Positions 2,261 through 33,121 of a stretch of 64,000 nt of DNA are shown here, piece after piece (position 1 is the stretch's first letter; each line of letters begins with the position of its first letter). The translations under genes were made by a program, and so were the position numbers. The stretch is from positions 186,001 through 250,000 of IMG/VR virus record IMGVR_UViG_3300036944_001324. One strand, 5' to 3'. The notes under the pieces are model-generated. The model saw nothing but the letters and a program-made list of their open reading frames with translations. It did not search any database and was not told the origin of the DNA.

Positions 2261-2482
2261 ACGACTTTGGACGCTACGAGACAATAGTGTCAGTTATGGT
2301 GGTGATTTATGGAGTACTAACAATACTCTGTAGCGTTGCCCTTTGGAAGACGTCTAGTCTGTATCCCTTCACCTCCAAATGAAGCGGGTGCTACATAAAA
2401 GGGATTATGCGTCTTACCCGAAGAAACCAACAACGCCTTATGAATCAATCATCATTTCAACCTCAAGGATAGATAACAGAAA

Positions 2483-4660
2483 ATGGCTGCCTCTATCAAG
2501 CTGACTGTAGCGTCCCACCACTACAAAGTCGAGCCACGAACTCAGGAAGCAAAGGAAATGCTTTTTGAGTTCACTCGCCGTTTCTTGAAAGTGGACTTTC
2601 AAGGTAACGTTAGATCTATTACCACGTTCGCGGCTGCTAACAAATCGCGGTCGTGGTTCAGATTTCACATCAACAGTCTCACTGAGTTTTACATGTTTGC
2701 GAGAAATCGCAACTACCTGAAAGAACAGATGGAGATTGTGGTTCGGCCTTACATCGAACTAGCCAAGGTCGACCTTCCTGTAAAAGAACACTGGGAGGTT
2801 CGTGTTGATCAAGTACCGATTGTCGACTACCTGACCAAACCCATCGCTGTTGACGAACCCAAAGCCAAGCTAGTGGGACTTCAGACAGGCGGCGGTAAAG
2901 CGATACCGAACGATACGCTCGTTAAAACACCTGATGGTTGGGTGGCTAACAAGGACCTCAAGGTAGGTGATACCATCGTTGCATGGGACGGCACGCACTC
3001 CAAAGTCACTGGTTTGTTCCCTCAGGGTCTGGTTGAAGTCTGCACTATGCGCTTTGACGATGGGCGAGAGCGCGTGTGCTCTTGGGATCACCTCTGGCGC
3101 GTTTACGTTAGCGAGTGTCCTATTCCTCAGGTATTGACGTCCAGGCAAATGGAAAGCCTTCTCTACAGCGGTAAAGGCCTGCGCATCGACTTGCACCTTG
3201 CCGCTACAGAAGAAGACAAAGCCGCTTTCGCAGAAGCCATCAAGGGTAAAGAAGACCCTCACTTGAGCTATCGTTATACCTTGAGACCCAAGTCTCAAGA
3301 AGAGCTGGAACGTCTGACCAAACTAGCCTGGGCTTGTGGCGCCAGAGCTAGCAGTGTCAAGCTTACTGACGAGAAGTTCTTGCTCTACGTTTTCACGAAC
3401 GATGACAGCTTCGCAGCCCGGACTATGTCTGTTGTTGCGATACGCCGCGGTGGTGGATCTAGGGAGATGCAGTGTATCTCCATCGATCATCCTGATCGAC
3501 TCTTCATCATCGAAGACTACATCGTCACTCACAACACGTTCACCGCCATCAAGTCGATCAGTGACATCGGGCACAAAGTAGCTGTCGTGCTCAAGCCAAA
3601 GTACATCGATAAATGGGTGGATGACTTCACCGATGAAACCAAGGGTATTTTGGACATCAGTGAAAAAGAGATCATGACGATCCAAGGTAGCGCAGAGCTC
3701 ATGGCTCTGACTAAACTGGTCGAGATCCCTGGGGCTTTGGACAAGTACAAGATCTTCATCTTCTCTAACCGAACGTTCGACAACTACCTCAAAGCTTACG
3801 AGTTGCTGGGCTCTGACATCACCGCCATGGGTTACATGGTCGAGCCTGACTACCTGTTCGAGCGCATGGGTGTGGGTATTCGCTTGATTGATGAGGTGCA
3901 TGAAGAGTTTCACGCCAACTTCCGGCAGGACTTGTACACACACGTTCACATGTCGATCAGCTTGTCTGCAACGCTGATATCGCGTGATCCTACGCTGATG
4001 CGGATGTATGAGACGGCTTATCCACAGGCAACGCGTTACAAAGCACCGCCTTTGGAGAGGTACACAACGAGTTACGGGGTGTATTACAACTCCAATCCGA
4101 ACTACCGCTTGAAAACTTCCGAGCGAGGTCAGTCCTCCTACAGCCACACGGCTTACGAGAGCTGTATCATGAACAATAAAACGTTCATGAAAGGCTACGG
4201 TGATATGATCAAACACTACCTTGATAAAGGGTTTGTTCAGAACTATGAACCTGGGCACAAAGCTATCGTGTTTGCGGCGACCATCGACATGTGTACCCGG
4301 CTTAAGGATCACTTGTCGGATGCTTACCCGCAGTTCTCTGTGCGGCGCTTTGTAACAGGCGATGATTACCATGCTGACTACCAAGCTCCCGATATTCGTG
4401 TAACGACAATCGGCAAGGGTGGTACGGGTTTGGACATCAAGAACCTCACAGATGCACACATGACTAACGCCTTGGATTCCATTCAGCAAAACATCCAAGC
4501 GTTCGGTCGTCTTCGCAACCTCCTTCCCAAAGAGACAAGGTTCTTTTGGTATACCAATCGACGTGTCCCTAAACACGTCAAGTACCATGCGAAGAAGATG
4601 CAATTGATGAAGGAAAGAGCGCTTAGCGTGTCCAACATCGACTACATGCCACAACTATAG
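2483..4660 (+). CDS. SF2 (DExH-box) DNA/RNA helicase, intein-containing; phiKZ gp75-like
   Basis: Walker A QTGGGK|T split by an intein; motif II LIDEVHE; motif III SLSAT; motif VI QAFGRLR. Position upstream of the RNAP beta' gene matches phiKZ-like synteny as I recall it. Confidence 0.9.
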   Translation: MAASIKLTVASHHYKVEPRTQEAKEMLFEFTRRFLKVDFQGNVRSITTFAAANKSRSWFRFHINSLTEFYMFARNRNYLKEQMEIVVRPYIELAKVDLPVKEHWEVRVDQVPIVDYLTKPIAVDEPKAKLVGLQTGGGKAIPNDTLVKTPDGWVANKDLKVGDTIVAWDGTHSKVTGLFPQGLVEVCTMRFDDGRERVCSWDHLWRVYVSECPIPQVLTSRQMESLLYSGKGLRIDLHLAATEEDKAAFAEAIKGKEDPHLSYRYTLRPKSQEELERLTKLAWACGARASSVKLTDEKFLLYVFTNDDSFAARTMSVVAIRRGGGSREMQCISIDHPDRLFIIEDYIVTHNTFTAIKSISDIGHKVAVVLKPKYIDKWVDDFTDETKGILDISEKEIMTIQGSAELMALTKLVEIPGALDKYKIFIFSNRTFDNYLKAYELLGSDITAMGYMVEPDYLFERMGVGIRLIDEVHEEFHANFRQDLYTHVHMSISLSATLISRDPTLMRMYETAYPQATRYKAPPLERYTTSYGVYYNSNPNYRLKTSERGQSSYSHTAYESCIMNNKTFMKGYGDMIKHYLDKGFVQNYEPGHKAIVFAATIDMCTRLKDHLSDAYPQFSVRRFVTGDDYHADYQAPDIRVTTIGKGGTGLDIKNLTDAHMTNALDSIQQNIQAFGRLRNLLPKETRFFWYTNRRVPKHVKYHAKKMQLMKERALSVSNIDYMPQL
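2900..3535 (+). mobile_element. class 3 intein (212 aa) with a degenerate homing-endonuclease remnant
   Basis: Starts AIPNDTLVKTPDGW (Ala1). Block B HLW, block F MQCISID, block G IVTHN followed by +1 Thr give the Trp-Cys-Thr triplet of class 3 inteins. Confidence 0.9.
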
Positions 4661-4717: not shown

Positions 4718-4790
4718 CGGCATAAATGCCCCACCCTATCAACCAAAGGCCCTTAAAAAGGCTTCTGGCGATAGGGTGGGGTATATGCTG
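4718..4790. terminator. bidirectional hairpin between convergent genes
   Basis: gccccaccctatc ... gatagggtggggt, flanked by cggcataaa and tatgctg. Confidence 0.7.
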
Positions 4791-4797
4791 TCTGTTT

Positions 4798-5262
4798 TTA
4801 TTTTGGTCTCGGTAGCTGGATACTGAGGCCATTCTTTCCAAGACCGGCATTTCTCAAGCTGGTTTGCTCATCTTGGAACCGCTCGATCTTTCGAGCTTCA
4901 CTGATCACCAACATGAACTCTCGCATCTCTCGGGGGAGATTCAAGAATTGTTCGACGCTAAGACCAGGATAGAACTCAGCCATGGAACTCTTGGTGTAGA
5001 GATCCAGGGCTGCAAAGAGTGGACCATTTCGACCGTACTCTTCCAGAGGACTCACCGCAATAGAAGACAACGGACGCATGACCATCGCGTTGCCTGCAGT
5101 CTGTAGACCGTAGTAAAGGTCAAAAAGCATATCCACAGCCACTCTCGTGGAATCTTCGTCATCGAACTTGGGCAGAGTGCGAAACGCATGTTCTACGAAA
5201 GCGTAGTCATCGATCGTTTTGCCATCTGCCTTGTACCGGATGCCAAAGTTGGGAGCGGCCAC
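4798..5262 (-). CDS. tail assembly chaperone-like downstream ORF (T4 gp51/lambda T-like); probably expressed as a -1 frameshift extension of 5271..6860
   Basis: C-terminal SVEQFLNLPREMREFML resembles chaperone T-type tails. GTG start has a weak RBS, and the frame is open back to a slippery site at 5316-5322. Confidence 0.6.
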   Translation of the reverse strand: MAAPNFGIRYKADGKTIDDYAFVEHAFRTLPKFDDEDSTRVAVDMLFDLYYGLQTAGNAMVMRPLSSIAVSPLEEYGRNGPLFAALDLYTKSSMAEFYPGLSVEQFLNLPREMREFMLVISEARKIERFQDEQTSLRNAGLGKNGLSIQLPRPK

Positions 5263-5270
5263 GTGGTTGC

Positions 5271-6860
5271 TTAACCCCGTTTTCGGATCAACGCAACTTT
5301 CTGGAAGAGGAGGGCGAAAAAAGTAGAGATGGCCTCCACCGGAATGATGGCGGGTGCATCTTCGTCGTCGCCGGCGCCTTCGGTCTGGTGTTGAACACCG
5401 TTGCAGTTGGGGCAGCGATAGTTCGGGATACCGATCACACTGATCAGCGTGGAGTTGCTAAAGTCAACCACACCTTGTTCGAACTGCTCGCGCAGGTCGT
5501 CGTTGGCAGATACCACCAACTCGAAGATGTCTTCCAGGCCGTCTTGGGTGTTCACGATGTCACCATCGATGATCACTTCCTTGACCCATTGCAGGTATTG
5601 GCGGGATGTGCTGACCTTGGCCAGGTCTTGCATGTAGCTGTTGCGCTTTTCGAGGTCCGCGTCCACACCCAAAGCTTCCACAACCGCCGAGGAGATGCCG
5701 GTAACCCAGCGATCGCCGGTGTTCAGGAAGTCGTGCAGGGTCGGGACCTTGTACACCACAGTCATGCGTTGACCGGTGCGGTTGTCCACGAGAACACGCT
5801 GATGACCGAAGTTGGCTGCAAAGCCTGCTTGGTACTTCTCGATCTGTTCCATAGAAACAGAGCGGTTCTTTTTGTTGCTCATGAAAACCAGCTGTTCTTG
5901 CGACAGACGGTTTTGGTTCACGCGCAACATGCGGGCTACGTTGATGCGTTCTTCCACCACGTGGCGGCACTTGTCGGGCGAGTTAACGCACGAGCGGCGG
6001 TAGTTGAAGCCGTTGGGGTAGATGGCTGCTGCCAAAGCCCAGACGATCGTCATGATGTCATGAACAGAGATGACCTTGGTGAGATCGATCTTCTCGTCAG
6101 CGGTGCCGTTGTATTCGCACTCAGCCAGCAGCTCAGCGAACAACTCGGCCGTGTAGACCATGTGGTTGCTGAACGACATGCCGTAGGTCATGCGACCCAG
6201 GGTGATCTTGTTGGAGACGATCTGGCGAGCAAACTCGATCAACCGTGCGTCGCCAGGGGCCTTGACGGTGATCCAGACGCCGGAGTGCCACAGAGGGGCG
6301 CGAAAGAGCGTACCCATCTTGAAGTGACTGAGTGCAGTCAGAACAGCGCGTTCGCCGGAGAGGTTCTTGCCCTTGCCGCTTTCCAGAGCGAGCGAAGCAC
6401 CCGTGAGGGTAGCTCCGTTTTCAGCACGGGGAGCGTGCGTCCAGTTGGCGTTGTGGTCGTTCAGTGCCGGAATCACTTCTTCACCGCCGAGATAACCCAG
6501 ACGACGGCCACGCTGCAGAACATCAGCCCACAGCGAGTCTTCACCCTGCTTGAGGGTGCTCATCTTGTTGATGGCTTCGTCGATCGCCAGACCGAACGTA
6601 GAAGGCAACGGCACGACTTCAGCAGTGCCGTCGAAGTTGCTGGATGTTGCGTCCGGAACCTGCAAGACGTTCTGGCGTTTGGCCAGGAAGTAGCTCTGCA
6701 GTGGAATGCCTTCGTCTTCCTTGGGCTTTGCGGCTGCTTCGGTGGGGATTTCCACCGGGTCATTGTCAGGCTGAGCTGCAGCGGTATTGTCAGGAACTTG
6801 TTCCTGTTTGAGGTCTTCAGCGCCGATGATTTCGCGGTCGGGTTGTTCAGGAGTGGTCAT
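5271..6860 (-). CDS. T4 gp26-like baseplate-hub/tail assembly chaperone with Zn-ribbon motifs; phiKZ gp77-like
   Basis: ISVHDIMTIVWAL..IYPNGFNYRRSC..PDKC and IPNYRCPNC motifs; acidic N-terminus. Confidence 0.55.
   Translation of the reverse strand: MTTPEQPDREIIGAEDLKQEQVPDNTAAAQPDNDPVEIPTEAAAKPKEDEGIPLQSYFLAKRQNVLQVPDATSSNFDGTAEVVPLPSTFGLAIDEAINKMSTLKQGEDSLWADVLQRGRRLGYLGGEEVIPALNDHNANWTHAPRAENGATLTGASLALESGKGKNLSGERAVLTALSHFKMGTLFRAPLWHSGVWITVKAPGDARLIEFARQIVSNKITLGRMTYGMSFSNHMVYTAELFAELLAECEYNGTADEKIDLTKVISVHDIMTIVWALAAAIYPNGFNYRRSCVNSPDKCRHVVEERINVARMLRVNQNRLSQEQLVFMSNKKNRSVSMEQIEKYQAGFAANFGHQRVLVDNRTGQRMTVVYKVPTLHDFLNTGDRWVTGISSAVVEALGVDADLEKRNSYMQDLAKVSTSRQYLQWVKEVIIDGDIVNTQDGLEDIFELVVSANDDLREQFEQGVVDFSNSTLISVIGIPNYRCPNCNGVQHQTEGAGDDEDAPAIIPVEAISTFFALLFQKVALIRKRG
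5316..5337 (-). promoter_or_regulatory. putative -1 programmed frameshift signal: internal SD GGAGG, 10-nt spacer, T TTT TTC
   Basis: Minus strand reads GGTGGAGG-CCATCTCTAC-T TTT TTC with the heptamer in the zero frame. The -1 frame is stop-free into ORF 4798..5262. Confidence 0.7.
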
Positions 6861-6862
6861 GT

Positions 6863-7336
6863 TCAGACAGGGGCTGGGGTGGTTTCAGGGACTTCGGCTT
6901 TGCTGGCCAGTTCAGAGGACTTGCGTTCCACTTCCGCCATGATGGACAGCAGGTAGTGATACGTAGGGATCACGATGGCGTTGACCTGCATCTCGTGCTT
7001 GATGTACGCCTCGGACAACTCGATCACTTGCATGATGTCTTCTTCGGGCTTGAGCGCACCGGTGCGACCAGCGTGAGTTGCGTGGATCTTGTTCAGGTCT
7101 TCCATGAAAGCCTTGACGTCTTCGCCCAGGGTGCGGATGGCCGAGATGGTCTTTTGGCGTTCTGCTTGCGGGATGAACGAAGCGACGCCTTCGATCGAGA
7201 AGAACTTGCTGACCTGATCGGTGACCGTACCCAGCAACCCACGGTTGGTGACGTACAGTGCTTCGATGTCAGACCAGGAGGTGTCGTTTTTGCGTGCGGC
7301 GTCGCGGGCTTTGCGAGCAGCGCTTTTCTGGGTCAT
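6863..7336 (-). CDS. hypothetical helical protein
   Basis: ATG 7336 (MTQKSAARK) preceded by AAGAGG. Confidence 0.75.
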   Translation of the reverse strand: MTQKSAARKARDAARKNDTSWSDIEALYVTNRGLLGTVTDQVSKFFSIEGVASFIPQAERQKTISAIRTLGEDVKAFMEDLNKIHATHAGRTGALKPEEDIMQVIELSEAYIKHEMQVNAIVIPTYHYLLSIMAEVERKSSELASKAEVPETTPAPV

Positions 7337-7557
7337 AGTGGCCTCTTGAGAAGAAATAGATGATGATGGAGACAGGGTACTCCGCAGATGATGCGATCGA
7401 GCTGAAAACTTGACATGCGTACTGTATAAAACAACCCGCATATGGCTTTTACTAAAGATTCGTAATCCTTTGATTCTTAGAACCTCTCGTGGTGCTCTCT
7501 ATATGAGTGATTACCACCGCAATAAAAACTCCATACTTCTTTTCACAAGGAAAACGA

Positions 7558-20922: not shown

Positions 20923-21669
20923 ATGCGAGTTCTTGTTTCTAACACCCCTGTTCAAAAACCATTGTTGGCTGACATCGCTCTGCACAGCTTCATCAACGGT
21001 TCCCTGTTCCTCACGACAGGGATTCAAGTGGAGCACGGAAAGATTCACTTGAGTGACCGCACCATCGTTGAAGACGGCGTTGGCGGCTGGATCAAAAACT
21101 ACAGCCCTGATTCGTGGTGTGCTGTGCTCGGTTACAAGAGCACCAACATCATCCTCGGCGTAGGGATATTCGACAGCTGGTATCTCGATCGCTTGAAAGA
21201 TCAACTCGAGTCCATCCTTGGAAACGAGACCGTCACTATTGAGACGGAGCGGATCTTCTACACCGAAGACGACAAGCTGGAAGCAAGCTTGAAGACATCG
21301 ATCGTCGTTCCCAGCAAACGACTCACGGTTTTGTTGTCCCCGTACAACTACGACCATTCTGAAGGTCAGGACATCGCCGAAGTCGGTGAAGTGGTGACCC
21401 ATCTGGATGGAGTGGAAGATCCTCGTGACAAAAAGGTTTCTGACACTCGCCTGATTATGAAACTTGCTCAGCCTCTTGATCCAGAAGCCGTCAAGAAGGT
21501 GATCGAGGAAAACCCGCACCGGATCTCGCTCGATCCTGATAACGAGAACTTCCATATCCGTCACAGTCCCGGCGGTAAGAAGGAGCGCGGAGTTCTGGAT
21601 GCAGACGGGCAGTTCATTCCACTCCCTGACGATCAACAACCCTGGAAGGATCAAGATGGAACTGTTTAA
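20923..21669 (+). CDS. hypothetical protein
   Basis: AAGGAG RBS. Confidence 0.75.
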   Translation: MRVLVSNTPVQKPLLADIALHSFINGSLFLTTGIQVEHGKIHLSDRTIVEDGVGGWIKNYSPDSWCAVLGYKSTNIILGVGIFDSWYLDRLKDQLESILGNETVTIETERIFYTEDDKLEASLKTSIVVPSKRLTVLLSPYNYDHSEGQDIAEVGEVVTHLDGVEDPRDKKVSDTRLIMKLAQPLDPEAVKKVIEENPHRISLDPDNENFHIRHSPGGKKERGVLDADGQFIPLPDDQQPWKDQDGTV

Positions 21670-23215
21670 ACCAAGGGATCTTGGTAACTGGTCAGCTATG
21701 CGATTCGCTCATCTTTCTTGTGGGGCTCAATTTGCTTTGGCTGAGTGGCTCTGGTGTTTTTCAGTTTTAAGACACTATCGTGAAAAAAGAGTTGCAGAAC
21801 TCTACGAATCTCCAACTCTACGCTATTTCTTCGAAGATGGTTTTTACAGGCCAGCTGATCCCGTTAGCGTCGATATCGCTACGCCTCGTGAGTACGGATT
21901 TTCTAACAGATTTACTAGACGATCCCGAGAAATGCGCACGGAGTTTGTAGGGCAACATTTTTCCATCGTGCCGAAACTGCGAAATCCAGATTTTGATAAA
22001 GGATGGGCATCGTCTACTGAAGACGATACCGAAACCTACGCCACGTACGCATACAGAACTGAAATATTTCACAACGCCATAAAGAAAATGACAAATCAAG
22101 CACCTCAAGCGCAAAACAACAACCTGACGACCGACGAACTTTACGTTCTGGCCATCATCCGACCTAACATCATGACGTCGGAAAACTACGCTTCGACGTT
22201 CATCCGTGACAACGATGTGTTTTTCACGTATGAACACATGGACCCTTCCAAAAAGGTCATGTTATCCAATGTGGACGGCTGGAAGGCTTTCTATGCCGAT
22301 CGTTTCCCAGGTTGCACAGTCAGCGTAGAGAAAGGCGTTCACAAGGGCGATGAAGTGCATTCACTGCGGTTTGTAGTGATGACGTCAGAACGAAAAATGG
22401 TATTGGTCTGGCTGGTGGCTGGGGATACCTATTCCCTCCACTACAAAAATCTGAAAGACGTCGAGGACCTGGTTAAATACATGCAAGGTATGCATGTGCC
22501 TAAAAAGCGAACCATCGTCCGCTGCTACTCAGGTGGCGACAAACTGATCACCAGCTCGGTGACTGTTGATGGTAAGTACCAAATTCATGATGAGTTCTAC
22601 CCGATGGTGGAACATATCGGCGGTATGAACGCTGTTCTGGACGGGTTCAAGAAGTCTTCCAGCAACCTGATGATCTTGGCGGGTCAATGGGGTGGTGGTA
22701 AGAGCGCTTTGTTCCAAGCATTGTGCTACAGCGACGAAAACGAAGCCAACAAGTACTACCTCATAGACGACCCCGCGGTGTATTCCGACTCTGCTTTGTT
22801 TTCTTCATTGATCGGTAAGATCGAAACTAACACCCGTGAGGGCGTTACGTCGTATCTGTTCCTGGAGGAAGCAGACGACTACATCCGCAGCAAGAAGAAC
22901 AACCCCTTCTTGTCTCGTCTGGCCGCCTTGACGGCCGGTGCGGCGCCTCTCAAGCTCAAGATCATGACCGCCACTAACGACAGCAGCGAAAGCGAGATCG
23001 ACAGCGCTCTCACGCGCGGCGGGCGCCTCTACGCGATGATCAAGTTCGGTCTGTTGACGCCCGAGCAAGCCAACACTTCTCGTGCAGTTTTGGATCTGAA
23101 ACCACGTGAGTTCGACAAGAACGTTACGTTGGCTGAGGCGCTGACAGAAGCTCCGATCATCACCGGCGCTGGAACCACCAAGTCCAACCGCATTGCTGTG
23201 GGTTTCACATCGTGA
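21656..23215 (+). CDS. AAA+ ATPase
   Basis: Walker A GQWGGGKS, Walker B LFLEEAD, sensor TATN and arginine-finger region DSALTRGGR. Confidence 0.85.
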   Translation: MELFKPRDLGNWSAMRFAHLSCGAQFALAEWLWCFSVLRHYREKRVAELYESPTLRYFFEDGFYRPADPVSVDIATPREYGFSNRFTRRSREMRTEFVGQHFSIVPKLRNPDFDKGWASSTEDDTETYATYAYRTEIFHNAIKKMTNQAPQAQNNNLTTDELYVLAIIRPNIMTSENYASTFIRDNDVFFTYEHMDPSKKVMLSNVDGWKAFYADRFPGCTVSVEKGVHKGDEVHSLRFVVMTSERKMVLVWLVAGDTYSLHYKNLKDVEDLVKYMQGMHVPKKRTIVRCYSGGDKLITSSVTVDGKYQIHDEFYPMVEHIGGMNAVLDGFKKSSSNLMILAGQWGGGKSALFQALCYSDENEANKYYLIDDPAVYSDSALFSSLIGKIETNTREGVTSYLFLEEADDYIRSKKNNPFLSRLAALTAGAAPLKLKIMTATNDSSESEIDSALTRGGRLYAMIKFGLLTPEQANTSRAVLDLKPREFDKNVTLAEALTEAPIITGAGTTKSNRIAVGFTS

Positions 23216-30676: not shown

Positions 30677-31003
30677 ATGTTCGAATCTTTCAATGCCGAT
30701 TTCTTCGGCATGTGTCTTTTGTTCGGCTTGGCTTGTCAGCTGAGTATCGAAGTCCTGGTCTTTGGTTGGGAACGAGGTTCGCGGCGGCTGAATAAGGAAA
30801 TCTGGGTGGACTTGCTCAAAACCCAGAAAAACAAACGCCGCATTAGTTGCGCGTTTGTTTTGTCGTTTGCAGCTGTGTGGGTGTTTGGGTTCTTCATGTT
30901 CCCATTGGAAATAGCAGTAGCGACCTTGATTTGTAGTTTGTCTTGGGTTGTCAGCTTGTACTTCACCTACTGCGGCGGTGCTGAGTCATTCGCCGAACGC
31001 TAA
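30677..31003 (+). CDS. membrane protein (about 3 TM)
   Basis: AAGGAG RBS; hydrophobic segments. Confidence 0.7.
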   Translation: MFESFNADFFGMCLLFGLACQLSIEVLVFGWERGSRRLNKEIWVDLLKTQKNKRRISCAFVLSFAAVWVFGFFMFPLEIAVATLICSLSWVVSLYFTYCGGAESFAER

Positions 31004-31093
31004 CTTCAGCGTTCATTCACAGCTTTTTTCCTGCCCTGCTATTAAAGGGATTAGGCATGGAATACCTCCAGCCATTTTCTAAAGGAAAAATAT

Positions 31094-31654
31094 ATGCTCG
31101 ACTCTAAGACCATCGCCCGCGCCGCCGCCGAAGGGTACACACTCAGAGACGTCATCGCAGCGGGTCGCGTTCAAGCCAAGCGTAATGTCTCGGACGGTTG
31201 CTGCCCGGGTTTTGGCAACCGCATAAACGTCAACCACCAAGAACTCGCTGAAGAAATTTACGGACACTGCCAATACGTAGGTGGCTACATCTACTCAGGC
31301 ACTACTTGGCGCCTGGACAAGCAGAGGCTTGATGTTTACGGCTATAGAAACTCTAGCCGAGTGGGCGAGAGTGTCGACCCACTCCGCACACTGGAAGAAC
31401 TTGTAAGAGTTCTTCAATCCGCTCCTGTCGGAGCACGTATTGAAAGTAGTCATAGCTCCATCAATAACCGTTCGTCTGAAACGCTGGTAAAAACGGCGAC
31501 TGGGTGGAAATCCATTCATGCTCACGACAGCGGGTGGGAATGCGGGGAAGAATTGCACTGGCACAACTTCCACGAAGTGGCGGCCATCATGGGTGTGGCT
31601 CCATCGAACACCTTTATCGCAGTATTCGACGAAGCGCGGAAGAGGTGCTACTGA
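31094..31654 (+). CDS. hypothetical protein
   Basis: AAGGA RBS. Confidence 0.7.
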   Translation: MLDSKTIARAAAEGYTLRDVIAAGRVQAKRNVSDGCCPGFGNRINVNHQELAEEIYGHCQYVGGYIYSGTTWRLDKQRLDVYGYRNSSRVGESVDPLRTLEELVRVLQSAPVGARIESSHSSINNRSSETLVKTATGWKSIHAHDSGWECGEELHWHNFHEVAAIMGVAPSNTFIAVFDEARKRCY

Positions 31655-31672
31655 ATAAGAGGCTCCCGTGCG

Positions 31673-31743
31673 GGGTCAGCTTTGACATCATATAGGAGGA
31701 CCCTTCGGGGTCCTCCTTTTATGTCGATTCTATTTTTTCTTGG
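31673..31743 (+). repeat. 71-bp direct repeat, copy 2
   Basis: 67/71 identical to 30134..30204. Confidence 0.9.
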
Positions 31744-31823
31744 CGATATATACCAGTTGTGAGATACAGGAAGAGTGGTTCTTCCTGGTCTCTTTGTTCA
31801 AACCCTTAAGGAGTATCCTCATC

Positions 31824-32309
31824 ATGACTACAGTAAACAAATTCTCGTTCGAGAACCAAAACCGCGCAAACAACTTGCGTGATAATATGATTGACGCCAT
31901 CATTGATGCTGTCGATTTCTCTCCTTTCGCTACGGCTGGGGAGATTGTTGCTGAGTACCTGGGCAACAAGGGCTTGCGCGATTACGCGCATTCTCAAGTA
32001 GGTGGTATTGCGTATTTTGAAGGTGGTAATGCGCTGGAGCGTCTGAGTAAACTGGTGGACCCAGAACTCGTGACACAAAACTTGGCAATGTTCGCCAGTG
32101 CTCTTCGTGACGCCGACAATGCAACAGTCGCTAAAGTTGCCGCCGAAATGTCTGATGACAATCATGACAGTTCGGAAGGTGTGTTTGGTGGGTATTTGTC
32201 GGTGAAAGGCTTCGAGGCCGAGTTGCTGGAAGTGCTGAGCACTGATGTCATCGGATCGATTCGTAACGGTTTGATCACCAAGCAACACCAAGAAGAATTC
32301 GCCAAGTAA
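31824..32309 (+). CDS. hypothetical protein
   Basis: AAGGAG RBS. Confidence 0.75.
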   Translation: MTTVNKFSFENQNRANNLRDNMIDAIIDAVDFSPFATAGEIVAEYLGNKGLRDYAHSQVGGIAYFEGGNALERLSKLVDPELVTQNLAMFASALRDADNATVAKVAAEMSDDNHDSSEGVFGGYLSVKGFEAELLEVLSTDVIGSIRNGLITKQHQEEFAK

Positions 32310-32319
32310 TTCCATCTAG

Positions 32320-32347
32320 GGGATCAGGCATCTGCCTGATCCTTTTT
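32320..32347 (+). terminator. intrinsic terminator
   Basis: ggatcaggc/gcctgatcc stem plus T-tract. Confidence 0.75.
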
Positions 32348-32368
32348 CTATTTCAATAAGGGTTTTCC

Positions 32369-33121
32369 ATGTTTTCCAAAATGAAAGTTTTGTTGGTTGT
32401 GTTGTTTGCTTCTGTTATGACTGCTTGCGGTGGTGGCGGAAGTCCTGAGGTGGAAGCTGAACTCAGTAGCTCCAAGTCGTATTCTTACGTAACTGCTTCT
32501 GTGGATGTCGTTGGTGATTCCATCTCCATTGGTGTGAATACGGAAGTGTCACCCATCATGCGTTTGACTGAATACCGTCCTAACTGGGCGGTTGTTCACC
32601 ATTCAGCTGGTGGGTTGCAACTCGACACCATGATTGCTGGTTACTCGGAACCAACACCTGGCGCTCATCCGATCTATTTCCCGATGGGTCCTCAACTGCC
32701 ATTCCCGCAAGTGCAGCGCAGCAGCCGCTATGTTGTGATTGCTTTGGGTGTGAATGATGCTTTGAACAACAGCACGATGCAAGAGGCTGTGCGGTTTGAA
32801 CACAACATGCGTTACGTTATCCGTACGTTGGTTGCAGAAAACCGTGTGCCTGTTCTCACTGGTGTTCCCAATCTGGCTGTGAACCCTGTGTTTCTGAAGC
32901 ATTACAACAACGTCACGTTGATGCTGGCTCAGGAATACGGTTTGGTGCACGCTGGCTGGGGTGAAGCTTACGGGATCGAAGGCGTAGGTAGTGACGGCAT
33001 CCACCCCCACCAAGGTGGCTCTGACATGCTCGCTGGTCGCCTCATCCGCGCTATCGACCAAGCTATCGAGCTTGACAACGCTGGTGTCTACGCCAACATC
33101 CAAATGTTGGCCATGAAGTAA
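32369..33121 (+). CDS. SGNH/GDSL-family esterase lipoprotein
   Basis: Lipobox MTA-C; blocks VVGDSIS, AGG, LGVND and DGIHP. Confidence 0.85.
   Translation: MFSKMKVLLVVLFASVMTACGGGGSPEVEAELSSSKSYSYVTASVDVVGDSISIGVNTEVSPIMRLTEYRPNWAVVHHSAGGLQLDTMIAGYSEPTPGAHPIYFPMGPQLPFPQVQRSSRYVVIALGVNDALNNSTMQEAVRFEHNMRYVIRTLVAENRVPVLTGVPNLAVNPVFLKHYNNVTLMLAQEYGLVHAGWGEAYGIEGVGSDGIHPHQGGSDMLAGRLIRAIDQAIELDNAGVYANIQMLAMK

What the first reader, a model, noticed from the sequence alone, without database searches (positions are those of the whole stretch)
4798..6860. Hidden -1 ribosomal frameshift fusing two core jumbo-phage genes (lambda G/G-T-like tail chaperone far from any tape-measure gene)
Seen: on the minus strand, near the end of the 529-aa ORF, the text is GGTGGAGG CCATCTCTAC T TTT TTC. 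This is an X XXY YYZ heptamer (5322-5316) in the correct zero frame, with a Shine-Dalgarno-like GGAGG exactly 10 nt upstream. The -1 frame reads FFRPPLPESCVDPKTGLSNHV with no stop and runs straight into the GTG of ORF 4798..5262, giving a predicted 687-aa fusion; that GTG has only a weak RBS. Known: an internal SD about 10 nt upstream stimulates -1 frameshifting in E. coli dnaX, and a -1 frameshift joins tail assembly chaperones G and G-T in many long-tailed phages. Inferred: this pair (T4 gp26-like Zn-ribbon protein plus gp51-like tail) is the jumbo-phage tail chaperone, here placed between the helicase and the RNAP gene. I do not recall this recoding being described for phiKZ-like phages.
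Basis: partly seen in the sequence, partly recalled or inferred. Interest (0 to 1): 0.85.

Follow-up and report, generated by a model that had tools for sequence, protein, structure and literature searches.

The report
Conserved frameshift in jumbo-phage core gene
A run of T's near the end of a core gene of phiKZ-like (nucleus-forming) jumbo phages very probably makes ribosomes slip back one base part of the time, producing a second, about 160-residue-longer form of the protein that current annotations of these phages, phiKZ included, miss.

Summary
The 529-aa ORF (5271..6860, minus strand) carries T_TTT_TTC in phase at 5322-5316, with GGAGG 10 nt upstream. The -1 frame runs without a stop into ORF 4798..5262 and predicts a 687-aa fusion.

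The frameshift reading is strongly supported by comparison. In 39 distinct relatives (phiKZ gp77, 201phi2-1-like, RAY, SPN3US, Goslar, Ralstonia, Xanthomonas, Vibrio and Bacillus phages, and metagenomes) a T-run sits at the same spot. It is a strict T_TTT_TTN heptamer in 35 and G_TTT_TTY in 4. The amino acid before the run varies, but its third base is T. The downstream ORF is always in the -1 frame. No -1 stop lies between the heptamer and the ORF1 stop (49 expected in the 33 loci counted). In many genomes the conserved start of ORF2 has no start codon; in phiKZ the first one is 219 nt downstream.

The functional reading is only partly supported. ORF1 is Chimalliviridae core gene cg18. It has a distant structural resemblance to T4 gp26-family hub-assembly chaperones. 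It is not a lambda G/G-T homologue. ORF2 shows no similarity to gp51. The GGAGG is not conserved (4 of 33). Goslar virions contain the ORF1 orthologue.

I found no paper and no GenBank record that annotates this recoding.

The parts
5271..6860 (-). ORF1, 529 aa. It is the orthologue of phiKZ gp77 / RAY gp267 / Goslar gp081 (Chimalliviridae core gene cg18). The N-terminal ~130 residues are disordered. The core is folded, with two Cys pairs (C291/C298 and C483/C486) and a C-terminal helix.
5316..5322 (-). Slippery heptamer T_TTT_TTC in the ORF1 zero frame (ACT TTT TTC = T513 F514 F515). This is the proposed site of the -1 shift.
   Evidence: conserved in relatives:
5333..5337 (-). GGAGG, 10 nt 5' of the heptamer (within codons GTG GAG GCC). 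It may enhance the shift in this lineage but is not conserved in the family.
   Evidence: 4 of 33 loci
5271..5322 (-). Dual-coding stretch. The zero frame encodes the ORF1 C-terminal helix (FFALLFQKVALIRKRG*). The -1 frame encodes the start of the extension (FFRPPLPESCVDPKTGL).
4798..5322 (-). Trans-frame (-1) reading frame from the heptamer to its stop: 174 codons including the two Phe, that is 172 aa added after F515. It contains the conserved motifs H-V-x4-F-G, Y/F-D-x3-G and L-S-x2-E-F-L-x-L-P.
4798..5262 (-). ORF2 as a mechanical ORF (GTG at 5262-5260, 154 aa). The GTG is the Val codon of the conserved H-V motif and has little Shine-Dalgarno sequence in front of it.
5458..5460 (-). Nearest upstream stop (TAG) in the -1 frame. 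Any shift into ORF2 must occur 3' of it.
6863..7441 (-). Upstream co-oriented gene (192 aa, in the position of phiKZ gp78). It is tightly linked to ORF1 in all relatives and is probably in the same operon.
4729..4781 (.). Long inverted repeat (arms 4781-4770 and 4740-4729) between ORF2 and the convergent helicase gene. It is a likely bidirectional transcription terminator that ends the operon.

Best explanation
ORF1 and ORF2 are one recoded gene. Most ribosomes translate ORF1 to its own stop and make the 529-aa protein. At T_TTT_TTC (5322-5316) a fraction of ribosomes slip back one base, with the Phe-tRNAs in the P and A sites re-pairing on UUU UUU. They then continue in the -1 frame through the ORF1 stop and through 'ORF2' to 4798. 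The product is a 687-aa isoform in which the last 14 residues (a C-terminal helix) are replaced by a 172-aa, partly helical domain.

The signal appears to be essentially the heptamer alone. No conserved 3' structure was found, and the 5' GGAGG is lineage-specific.

This arrangement is ancestral to the phiKZ-like (Chimalliviridae) phages. What is annotated as phiKZ gp076.4, Goslar gp082, RAY gp266 and so on is the 3' part of the trans-frame region.

Function (inferred, lower confidence). ORF1 is a very divergent structural relative of the T4 gp26/gp51 baseplate-hub assembly chaperone family. Making two C-terminal isoforms at a fixed ratio would let one form bind a second partner, as lambda G/G-T does. 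This would be a parallel in logic, not homology.
For: Shown by tools.

1. Anatomy in the window.

2. The same T-run sits at the same aligned position in 39 distinct genomes with 17-73% ORF1 identity. It is a strict T_TTT_TTN heptamer in 35 and G_TTT_TTY in 4.

3. Nucleotide-level constraint, counted in the 33-locus survey:
- The first Phe codon is TTT in 33 of 33, although TTT makes up only 0-53% of Phe codons elsewhere in the same genes (sum log10 P = -28 if loci are treated as independent).
- The preceding residue varies (T, L, V, I, A, G, Y, N, S), yet its third base is T in 31 of 33.

4. The downstream ORF is in the -1 frame in every genome, and that frame stays open 123-163 aa past the ORF1 stop. 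The +1 frame stays open only 0-67 codons, 20 or fewer in 24 of 33 loci.

5. There are 0 stops in the 661 -1-frame codons between heptamer and ORF1 stop, against 49 expected (P about 5e-22). In 10 genomes a -1 stop lies just 12 nt 5' of the heptamer, which brackets the shift site.

6. Conserved ORF2 motifs lie upstream of any start codon in many genomes. The first ATG/GTG/TTG is +219 nt in phiKZ, +216 nt in AgentSmith and +120 nt in pEa54, and no ORF2 was called at all in L010. The phiKZ start-less 216 nt aligns with three relatives only in the -1 frame (score 80 against 40 or less).

7. None of the 148 best family representatives read, each standing for a cluster at 50% identity, is an in-frame fusion (lengths 403-645 aa), so both isoforms appear to be maintained.

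8. Goslar virion mass spectrometry detects gp081 (24 peptides) and, about 7-fold lower, a peptide of gp082 (loci checked).

Function: an AF2 model (pTM 0.71) matches BFVD proteins named T4-like baseplate hub assembly protein or hub subunit (E 5e-5 to 3e-3, target-normalised TM 0.45-0.49). ORF1 shares the pattern of two Cys pairs plus a C-terminal FFxLL with T4 gp26. The DT01 and AgentSmith annotators cite gp26. gp26 and gp51 are listed as hub assembly chaperones in PMC3004832.
Against: - No protein or ribosome-profiling data show the junction.
- No conserved stimulatory RNA structure lies 3' or 5' of the site. The SD-like element occurs in only 4 of 33 loci. Efficiency may therefore be low and cannot be estimated here.
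- Four genomes lack the strict heptamer (G_TTT_TTY).
- In the window and its closest relatives a GTG or ATG sits at or next to the ORF1 stop, so ORF2 could also be made on its own there.
- The P values treat related genomes as independent.

On function:
- There is no Pfam PF12322 hit.
- Profile-profile comparison with the gp26/gp51 family is not significant (probability 2.4%).
- The gene lies beside virion-RNA-polymerase genes, not tail genes.
- The Goslar orthologue is in virions at an estimated 15-35 copies, which does not fit a purely transient chaperone.
Confidence: 0.75

Rival explanations
1. Transcriptional slippage. The phage (or host) RNA polymerase stutters on the T6-T8 run and adds one U to a fraction of the mRNAs. 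Standard translation of those mRNAs then gives the same fusion protein.
For: - The site is a homopolymer run of 6-8 T.
- No ribosomal stimulator is conserved.
- Four genomes keep a T-run but not the strict heptamer phase.
- In the window a weak hairpin precedes the U-run.
- These phages transcribe with their own unusual multisubunit RNA polymerases, whose slippage behaviour is unknown (general knowledge).
Against: - Runs of 6-7 are short for efficient polymerase slippage; from memory, known bacterial cases use about 9 or more.
- The run is always in the X_XXY_YYZ phase, and the base kept at the preceding codon's third position is exactly the one needed for P-site re-pairing.
- The upstream hairpin is not conserved (mean z -0.45).
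Confidence: 0.12
2. No recoding. ORF2 is an ordinary separate gene, started by coupling or re-initiation at the GTG (5262) or at unusual start codons in other phages. The T-run is conserved only because the protein needs Phe-Phe there.
For: - A GTG or ATG lies at or near the ORF1 stop in the window clade, and ATGA/TAATG-type overlaps naturally give a -1 relation.
- F514 and F515 are conserved residues, and T4 gp26 also ends in FFELL.
- All GenBank records annotate two genes.
Against: - Many genomes have no ATG/GTG/TTG for 100-219 nt although the conserved ORF2 motifs lie in that stretch.
- The choice of the TTT codon and the T at the preceding third position is not explained by the amino acids.
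- The -1 frame is stop-free back to the heptamer in all genomes, although its background stop density is 7% per codon.
- T4 gene 26 encodes its FF as TTC TTT, with no run.
Confidence: 0.06
3. The pair is the jumbo-phage member of the lambda G/G-T (P2 E/E', Mu gp41/42) tail assembly chaperone family. It would coat the tape measure protein and recruit tube subunits.
For: - It shares the expression logic: a -1 shift near the 3' end yields a C-terminally extended isoform.
- Several proteins named tail assembly or tape-measure chaperone appear among the non-significant fold hits (E 0.5-1.9).
- No G/G-T-type chaperone pair is annotated in any of the loci inspected.
Against: - There is no Pfam, NCBIfam or PDB match to such chaperones, and the fold hits to them are not significant.
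- ORF1 is 490-670 aa, against about 100-150 aa for G-like proteins.
- The locus is flanked by helicase and virion-RNAP genes in all relatives.
- The Goslar orthologue is present in purified virions, whereas G/G-T are absent from mature particles (textbook knowledge).
Confidence: 0.1

Closest known systems
Lambda G / G-T (and P2 E/E+E', Mu gp41/42) programmed -1 frameshift in tail assembly chaperone genes
   Same: - A -1 shift on a heptamer a few dozen nt before the stop of a phage morphogenesis-type gene.
- Two products share the N-terminus and differ at the C-terminus.
- The signal seems to need little beyond the slippery site.
- The arrangement is conserved across a large phage group while the protein sequence diverges.
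   Different: - There is no sequence or significant fold homology.
- ORF1 is about four times larger.
- The heptamer is U_UUU_UUN rather than G_GGA_AAG.
- The locus is not between tube and tape-measure genes.
- The orthologue is detected in virions.
T4 gp26 / gp51 (Pfam PF12322, 'gp26 family baseplate hub assembly chaperone')
   Same: - Foldseek links the ORF1 model to PF12322-type proteins.
- Both have two Cys pairs, the second being CPxC just before a C-terminal FFxLL helix.
- T4 gene 26 also yields two products that share one end, gp26 and the internally initiated 26'.
   Different: - HMM and profile-profile tests are negative.
- ORF1 is 2.5 times longer.
- T4 makes its second product by internal initiation, not frameshifting, and has no T-run.
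- ORF2 has no detectable relation to gp51.
E. coli dnaX (tau/gamma) -1 frameshift
   Same: A heptamer with an internal Shine-Dalgarno-like GGAGG exactly 10 nt upstream in the window and three close relatives.
   Different: - dnaX also uses a strong 3' stem-loop, and the shift truncates the protein.
- Here no 3' structure is found, the SD is not conserved, and the shift extends the protein.
HIV-1 gag-pol slippery site U_UUU_UUA
   Same: The same class of heptamer, an all-U run read by Phe/Leu tRNAs (PMC4373837, seen).
   Different: It is a eukaryotic retroviral context with a 3' stem-loop stimulator and unrelated proteins.

Membership tests
Programmed -1 ribosomal frameshift site (X_XXY_YYZ class) | Slippery heptamer in the zero-frame phase | tested here: met
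   T_TTT_TTC at 5322-5316. A strict heptamer is present in 35 of 39 distinct relatives and G_TTT_TTY in 4.
Programmed -1 ribosomal frameshift site (X_XXY_YYZ class) | Open, protein-coding -1 frame from the site onward, conserved in orthologues | tested here: met
   The -1 frame is open 123-163 aa past the ORF1 stop in all genomes. There are 0 stops in 661 codons against 49 expected. Conserved motifs are present, and similarity is seen only in the -1 frame.
Programmed -1 ribosomal frameshift site (X_XXY_YYZ class) | Conservation of the site at synonymous positions, beyond the amino-acid constraint | tested here: met
   The first Phe codon is TTT in 33 of 33. The preceding third base is T in 31 of 33 even though 9 different residues occur there.
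Programmed -1 ribosomal frameshift site (X_XXY_YYZ class) | Stimulatory element (3' hairpin or pseudoknot, or 5' SD-like sequence) | tested here: not met
   No conserved 3' structure and no covariation were found, and z-scores are near 0. The 5' GGAGG occurs in only 4 of 33 loci. Upstream folding is not significant. This feature is not obligatory for the class; from memory, lambda G-T lacks one.
Programmed -1 ribosomal frameshift site (X_XXY_YYZ class) | Trans-frame protein actually made | not testable with these tools
   Only indirect evidence exists. Goslar virion mass spectrometry finds one gp082 peptide at about one seventh of the gp081 signal.
Lambda G/G-T-type tail assembly chaperones | Sequence or fold membership in a tail-assembly-chaperone family | tested here: not met
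   No hits in Pfam, NCBIfam or PDB. Foldseek hits to proteins named as such chaperones have E 0.5-1.9.
Lambda G/G-T-type tail assembly chaperones | Gene pair located between the tail tube and tape-measure genes | tested here: not met
   In all relatives the pair is flanked by the helicase gene, the gp78-like gene and the gp79/gp80 (virion RNAP) genes.
Lambda G/G-T-type tail assembly chaperones | -1 frameshift near the 3' end giving a C-terminally extended second product | tested here: met
Lambda G/G-T-type tail assembly chaperones | Absent from the mature virion | tested here: not met
   The Goslar orthologue gp081 has 24 peptides in CsCl-purified virions, an estimated 15-35 copies. This was seen in one phage only.
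T4 gp26/gp51 family (PF12322, baseplate hub assembly chaperone) | Match to the family HMM | tested here: not met
   PF12322 matches T4 gp26 and gp51 but none of 17 ORF1 family members, even at E up to 1.
T4 gp26/gp51 family (PF12322, baseplate hub assembly chaperone) | Profile-profile similarity | tested here: inconclusive
   hhalign of A3 against A7 gives probability 2.4%. A1 against T4 gp26 alone aligns the CPxC...FFxLL C-terminus at probability 28%.
T4 gp26/gp51 family (PF12322, baseplate hub assembly chaperone) | Shared fold | tested here: met
   The Foldseek/BFVD hits form a graded series. Orthologues come first (E 1e-32), then intermediates, then 'Baseplate hub assembly protein, bacteriophage T4-like' at E 5e-5 and 'baseplate hub subunit' proteins at E 3e-4 to 3e-3. 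For these last two, target-normalised TM is 0.45-0.49. The model has pTM 0.71.
T4 gp26/gp51 family (PF12322, baseplate hub assembly chaperone) | Role in baseplate hub assembly | not testable with these tools
   This needs genetics or biochemistry.
dnaX-type SD-stimulated frameshift | Conserved internal SD about 10 nt 5' of the heptamer, plus a 3' stem-loop | tested here: not met
   The SD at 10 nt occurs only in the window and three close relatives. No 3' stem-loop was found.

The most novel reading that the evidence does not exclude
Every nucleus-forming jumbo phage encodes a hidden trans-frame protein of about 650-820 aa (687 aa in this window), made from core gene cg18 (phiKZ gp77) and the 'small gene' after it. 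The short and long isoforms would be kept at a fixed ratio by a bare U-run. Together they would act as the giant-tail counterpart of lambda G/G-T, evolved independently from a gp26/gp51-type hub chaperone and partly retained in the virion. A further unexcluded twist is that the slip is made by the phage's own non-canonical RNA polymerase rather than by the ribosome.
Probability: 0.3. Interest if true: 0.75.

Novelty: new member of a known kind. Interest (0 to 1): 0.66.

Why it matters
phiKZ-like (Chimalliviridae) phages are intensively studied for their phage nucleus and for therapy, and cg18/gp77 is one of their 68 core genes with no assigned function.

If the frameshift is real, the following holds:
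- Every genome annotation in the family is wrong at this locus. The downstream 'gene' is truncated, mis-started or missing.
- A protein of roughly 75-80 kDa has been absent from the search databases used for proteomics, interaction and localisation screens.
- Knock-outs or transposon hits in the 'small gene' really hit the long isoform.

It would also add a second, independent case of phages using a -1 shift to set the ratio of two isoforms of a morphogenesis-type protein. This case sits in a family related by fold to the poorly understood T4 gp26/gp51 hub chaperones, and it gives a direct handle (heptamer mutants, fused or unfused alleles) for finding out what that protein does.

Tried and rejected
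- Pfam, NCBIfam, PHROGs and PDB sequence searches of ORF1, ORF2 and the gp78-like gene gave only unnamed PHROGs.
- Foldseek against PDB gave nothing for either model. The ORF2-extension model is of low confidence (pLDDT 68).
- hhalign against T4 gp26, gp51 and a gp26/gp51 family alignment was not significant. I therefore do not file ORF1 as a PF12322 member.
- I looked for a 3' stimulatory structure with RNAalifold on 9 relatives and per-sequence folds with shuffles on 33. I also looked for a 5' hairpin and an Rfam match. None was found.
- I checked whether T4 gene 26 uses the same trick. It does not: its codons are TTC TTT, and genes 26 and 51 are divergently transcribed.
- The search for related loci with the full alignment failed because no block was conserved enough.
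- A profile query to the search for homologous proteins returned only the same 11 proteins.
- The representative search lists only the best 150 hits, so I could not test whether its weakest hits are PF12322 proteins.
- Literature searches for any description of this frameshift found nothing.
Full report
**1. What is in the window**

On the minus strand, ORF1 runs 6860..5271 (529 aa) and ORF2 runs 5262..4798 (GTG start, 154 aa).

- ORF2 is in the -1 frame of ORF1.
- The ORF1 codons ACT TTT TTC (T513 F514 F515) place T_TTT_TTC (5322-5316) in the X_XXY_YYZ phase, 51 nt before the ORF1 stop.
- GGAGG (5337-5333) lies exactly 10 nt upstream.
- The -1 frame is open from 5457 to 4798. A shift at the heptamer gives 515 + 172 = 687 aa.

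As a chance control, the window holds 44 in-phase heptamers in its 94 six-frame ORFs of at least 150 aa. Only two are followed by a -1 frame that stays open at least 50 codons past the stop.

**2. Where the window comes from and what ORF1 is**

- The window is part of IMG/VR UViG 3300036944_001324 (271.6 kb).
- ORF1 has about 236 homologues in GenBank phages, all phiKZ-like jumbo phages and all below 35% identity.
- The phiKZ orthologue is gp77. It is core gene cg18 of the nucleus-forming family, equal to Goslar gp081 and RAY gp267 and listed as 'hypothetical protein' (supplement of PMC10299810).
- A full-library HMM search found 1741 cluster representatives (clusters at 50% identity).

**3. 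Comparative test of the frameshift**

I collected the locus from three sources:
- eight metagenomic relatives with 44-73% identity;
- 25 GenBank/RefSeq phage records;
- further IMG/VR contigs.

Together with the window these make 39 distinct genomes. Results:

- **T-run.** All 39 have a T-run at the same aligned position, 33-120 nt before the ORF1 stop. It is a strict T_TTT_TTN heptamer in 35 and G_TTT_TTY in 4 (FLC9, Noxifer, L038, L039).
- **Codon choice.** In the 33-locus survey, the first Phe codon is TTT in all 33, while TTT is only 0-53% of Phe codons elsewhere in the same genes. The residue before it varies (T, L, V, I, A, G, Y, N, S), yet its third base is T in 31 of 33. This is a nucleotide-level constraint, not an amino-acid one.
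- **Frame relation.** The downstream ORF is in the -1 frame in every genome. The -1 frame runs 123-163 aa past the ORF1 stop. The +1 frame runs only 0-67 codons, 20 or fewer in 24 of 33 loci.
- **Stop codons.** Background -1-frame stop density inside ORF1 is 7.2% per codon. Between the heptamer and the ORF1 stop there are none in 661 codons, against 49 expected. In 10 genomes a -1 stop sits 12 nt upstream of the heptamer, so the shift window is tightly bracketed.
- **Extension length and motifs.** From the slip site the trans-frame extension is 151-180 aa everywhere. It carries shared motifs: FF(R/Y)P, H-V-x4-F-G, Y/F-D-x3-G-I and L-S-x2-E-F-L-x-L-P.
- **Missing start codons.** In many genomes these motifs lie upstream of the first possible start codon: +219 nt in phiKZ, +216 in AgentSmith, +120 in pEa54, +117 in L012. 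In L010 no gene was called at all.
- **The phiKZ gap.** The 216-nt start-less 'intergenic' stretch after phiKZ gp77 is similar to 201phi2-1-like loci only in the -1/-1 frame comparison (score about 80 against 40 or less).
- **Annotator behaviour.** Annotators truncated the gene (phiKZ gp076.4, Goslar gp082), pushed its start back into ORF1 (RAY gp266 overlaps gp267 by 136 nt), or missed it. None of the 25 records joins the CDSs.
- **No natural fusions.** None of the 148 best family representatives read (clusters at 50% identity) is an in-frame fusion (403-645 aa), and 146 of 148 keep F-[FL] near the C-terminus. This argues that both isoforms are needed.

**4. Stimulators**

- RNAalifold on nine relatives found no conserved or covarying 3' structure.
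- Single-sequence folds of the 70 nt after the heptamer have z-scores around zero.
- The 5' GGAGG at 10 nt is present only in the window and three close relatives, where it is the codons GTG GAG GCC.
- Upstream hairpins are not consistently present.
- There is no Rfam match.

So the conserved signal is the U-run itself. The dnaX-like SD may be a local enhancer at best.

**5. Independent hint of expression**

In the supplement of the Goslar structure preprint (10.64898/2026.04.21.720040), LC-MS/MS of CsCl-purified virions lists two relevant proteins:
- gp081 (62,588 Da): 24 peptides, 49% coverage, estimated 15-35 copies per virion.
- gp082 (12,933 Da): one peptide, estimated 2-5 copies.

I confirmed that these are the ORF1 and truncated-ORF2 orthologues, with CTT TTT TTT 57 nt before the stop and a 159-aa -1 extension.

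This shows that the ORF2 region is translated and travels with ORF1 at roughly a tenth of its level. That is compatible with a low-efficiency frameshift product, but it does not prove a covalent fusion.

**6. Function**

- ORF1 has no Pfam, NCBIfam or PDB sequence match.
- An AF2 model (pTM 0.71) has a disordered N-terminal ~130 residues and a confident core. It has no PDB fold match.
- In BFVD it matches its orthologues, then intermediates. It then matches a 'Baseplate hub assembly protein, bacteriophage T4-like' at E 5e-5 and several 'baseplate hub subunit' proteins at E 3e-4 to 3e-3, with target-normalised TM 0.45-0.49.
- T4 gp26 and gp51 both belong to PF12322. Both are listed as hub assembly chaperones in the T4 tail review (PMC3004832).
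- ORF1 shares with gp26 the layout of two Cys pairs, the second a CPxC just before a C-terminal FFxLL helix. Profile-profile comparison is nevertheless not significant.
- I therefore call ORF1 a distant structural relative of the gp26/gp51 family, not a demonstrated member.
- The ORF2 extension has no detectable relative outside the family. Its model is confident only for a helical C-terminal half.
- T4 gene 26 has no T-run. It makes its second product (26') by internal initiation.

**7. Mechanism proposed**

Shown:
- the slippery site;
- the open, coding -1 frame;
- the lack of start codons in many genomes;
- family-wide conservation.

Inferred:
- Tandem -1 slippage of Phe-tRNAs on U_UUU_UUN.
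- A minority long isoform in which the ORF1 C-terminal helix (14 aa here) is replaced by a domain of about 170 aa.
- A fixed short:long ratio that serves an assembly role, by analogy with lambda G/G-T.

Rivals:
- Transcriptional slippage on the T-run gives the same protein and is not excluded.
- Purely independent initiation of ORF2 is poorly compatible with the start-less genomes and the synonymous-site pattern.
- True membership in the G/G-T chaperone family is rejected on homology, size, locus and virion presence.

**8. Novelty**

The kind of mechanism is well known. This instance is a family-wide recoding event in a core gene of the nucleus-forming jumbo phages, including phiKZ itself. I could not find it in the searchable literature or in any GenBank annotation inspected.

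**Caveats**

- There are no direct protein data for the junction.
- The P values treat related genomes as independent.
- The functional assignment rests on one predicted structure and a remote fold match.

Noticed in passing
window 21599-23215 (+), heptamer about 16 nt before the stop at 23215: A second in-phase heptamer, G_GGT_TTC, whose -1 frame stays open 100 codons beyond the ORF stop. The downstream gene has a GTG overlapping the TGA (GTGA), so this is probably ordinary translational coupling.
   Followed up: partly
window 4729-4781: A 12-bp inverted repeat (arms 4781-4770 and 4740-4729) with an inner small hairpin. It lies between the convergent helicase gene (ends 4660) and ORF2 (ends 4798) and is a likely bidirectional terminator.
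   Followed up: no
L046 (Goslar) 30832-32918; supplement of preprint 10.64898/2026.04.21.720040: The ORF1 orthologue gp081 is detected in purified Goslar virions at an estimated 15-35 copies, about the same as the virion RNAP subunit gp078 encoded next door. It is not among the modelled structural proteins. A head-packaged or vRNAP-linked role is therefore not excluded.
   Followed up: partly
L035 (T4) 2303-3729: T4 gp26 and gp51 both match Pfam PF12322 over about 200 residues, so the two hub-assembly chaperones are paralogues. Their genes are divergently transcribed.
   Followed up: yes
L006 4758-6608 (-): In one metagenomic relative the neighbouring helicase-position gene encodes 864 aa with a LAGLIDADG_3 hit, against 724-725 aa in the window and other relatives. 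This suggests a homing-endonuclease or intein insertion.
   Followed up: no
L016 (RAY) 3936-4484, L014 (phiKZ) 3443-3685, L010: The downstream ORF is annotated inconsistently. In RAY gp266 it starts 136 nt inside gp267. In phiKZ gp076.4 it starts 219 nt after gp77. In L010 it is not called at all. These are symptoms of a gene without its own start.
   Followed up: yes
window 5322-5340 (-): A weak hairpin with G-U pairs (GGTGGAGG..CTCTACT) lies directly before the U-run and was flagged as terminator-like. Similar stems exist in some relatives, including a 6-bp palindrome in phiKZ, but overall they are not significant.
   Followed up: partly
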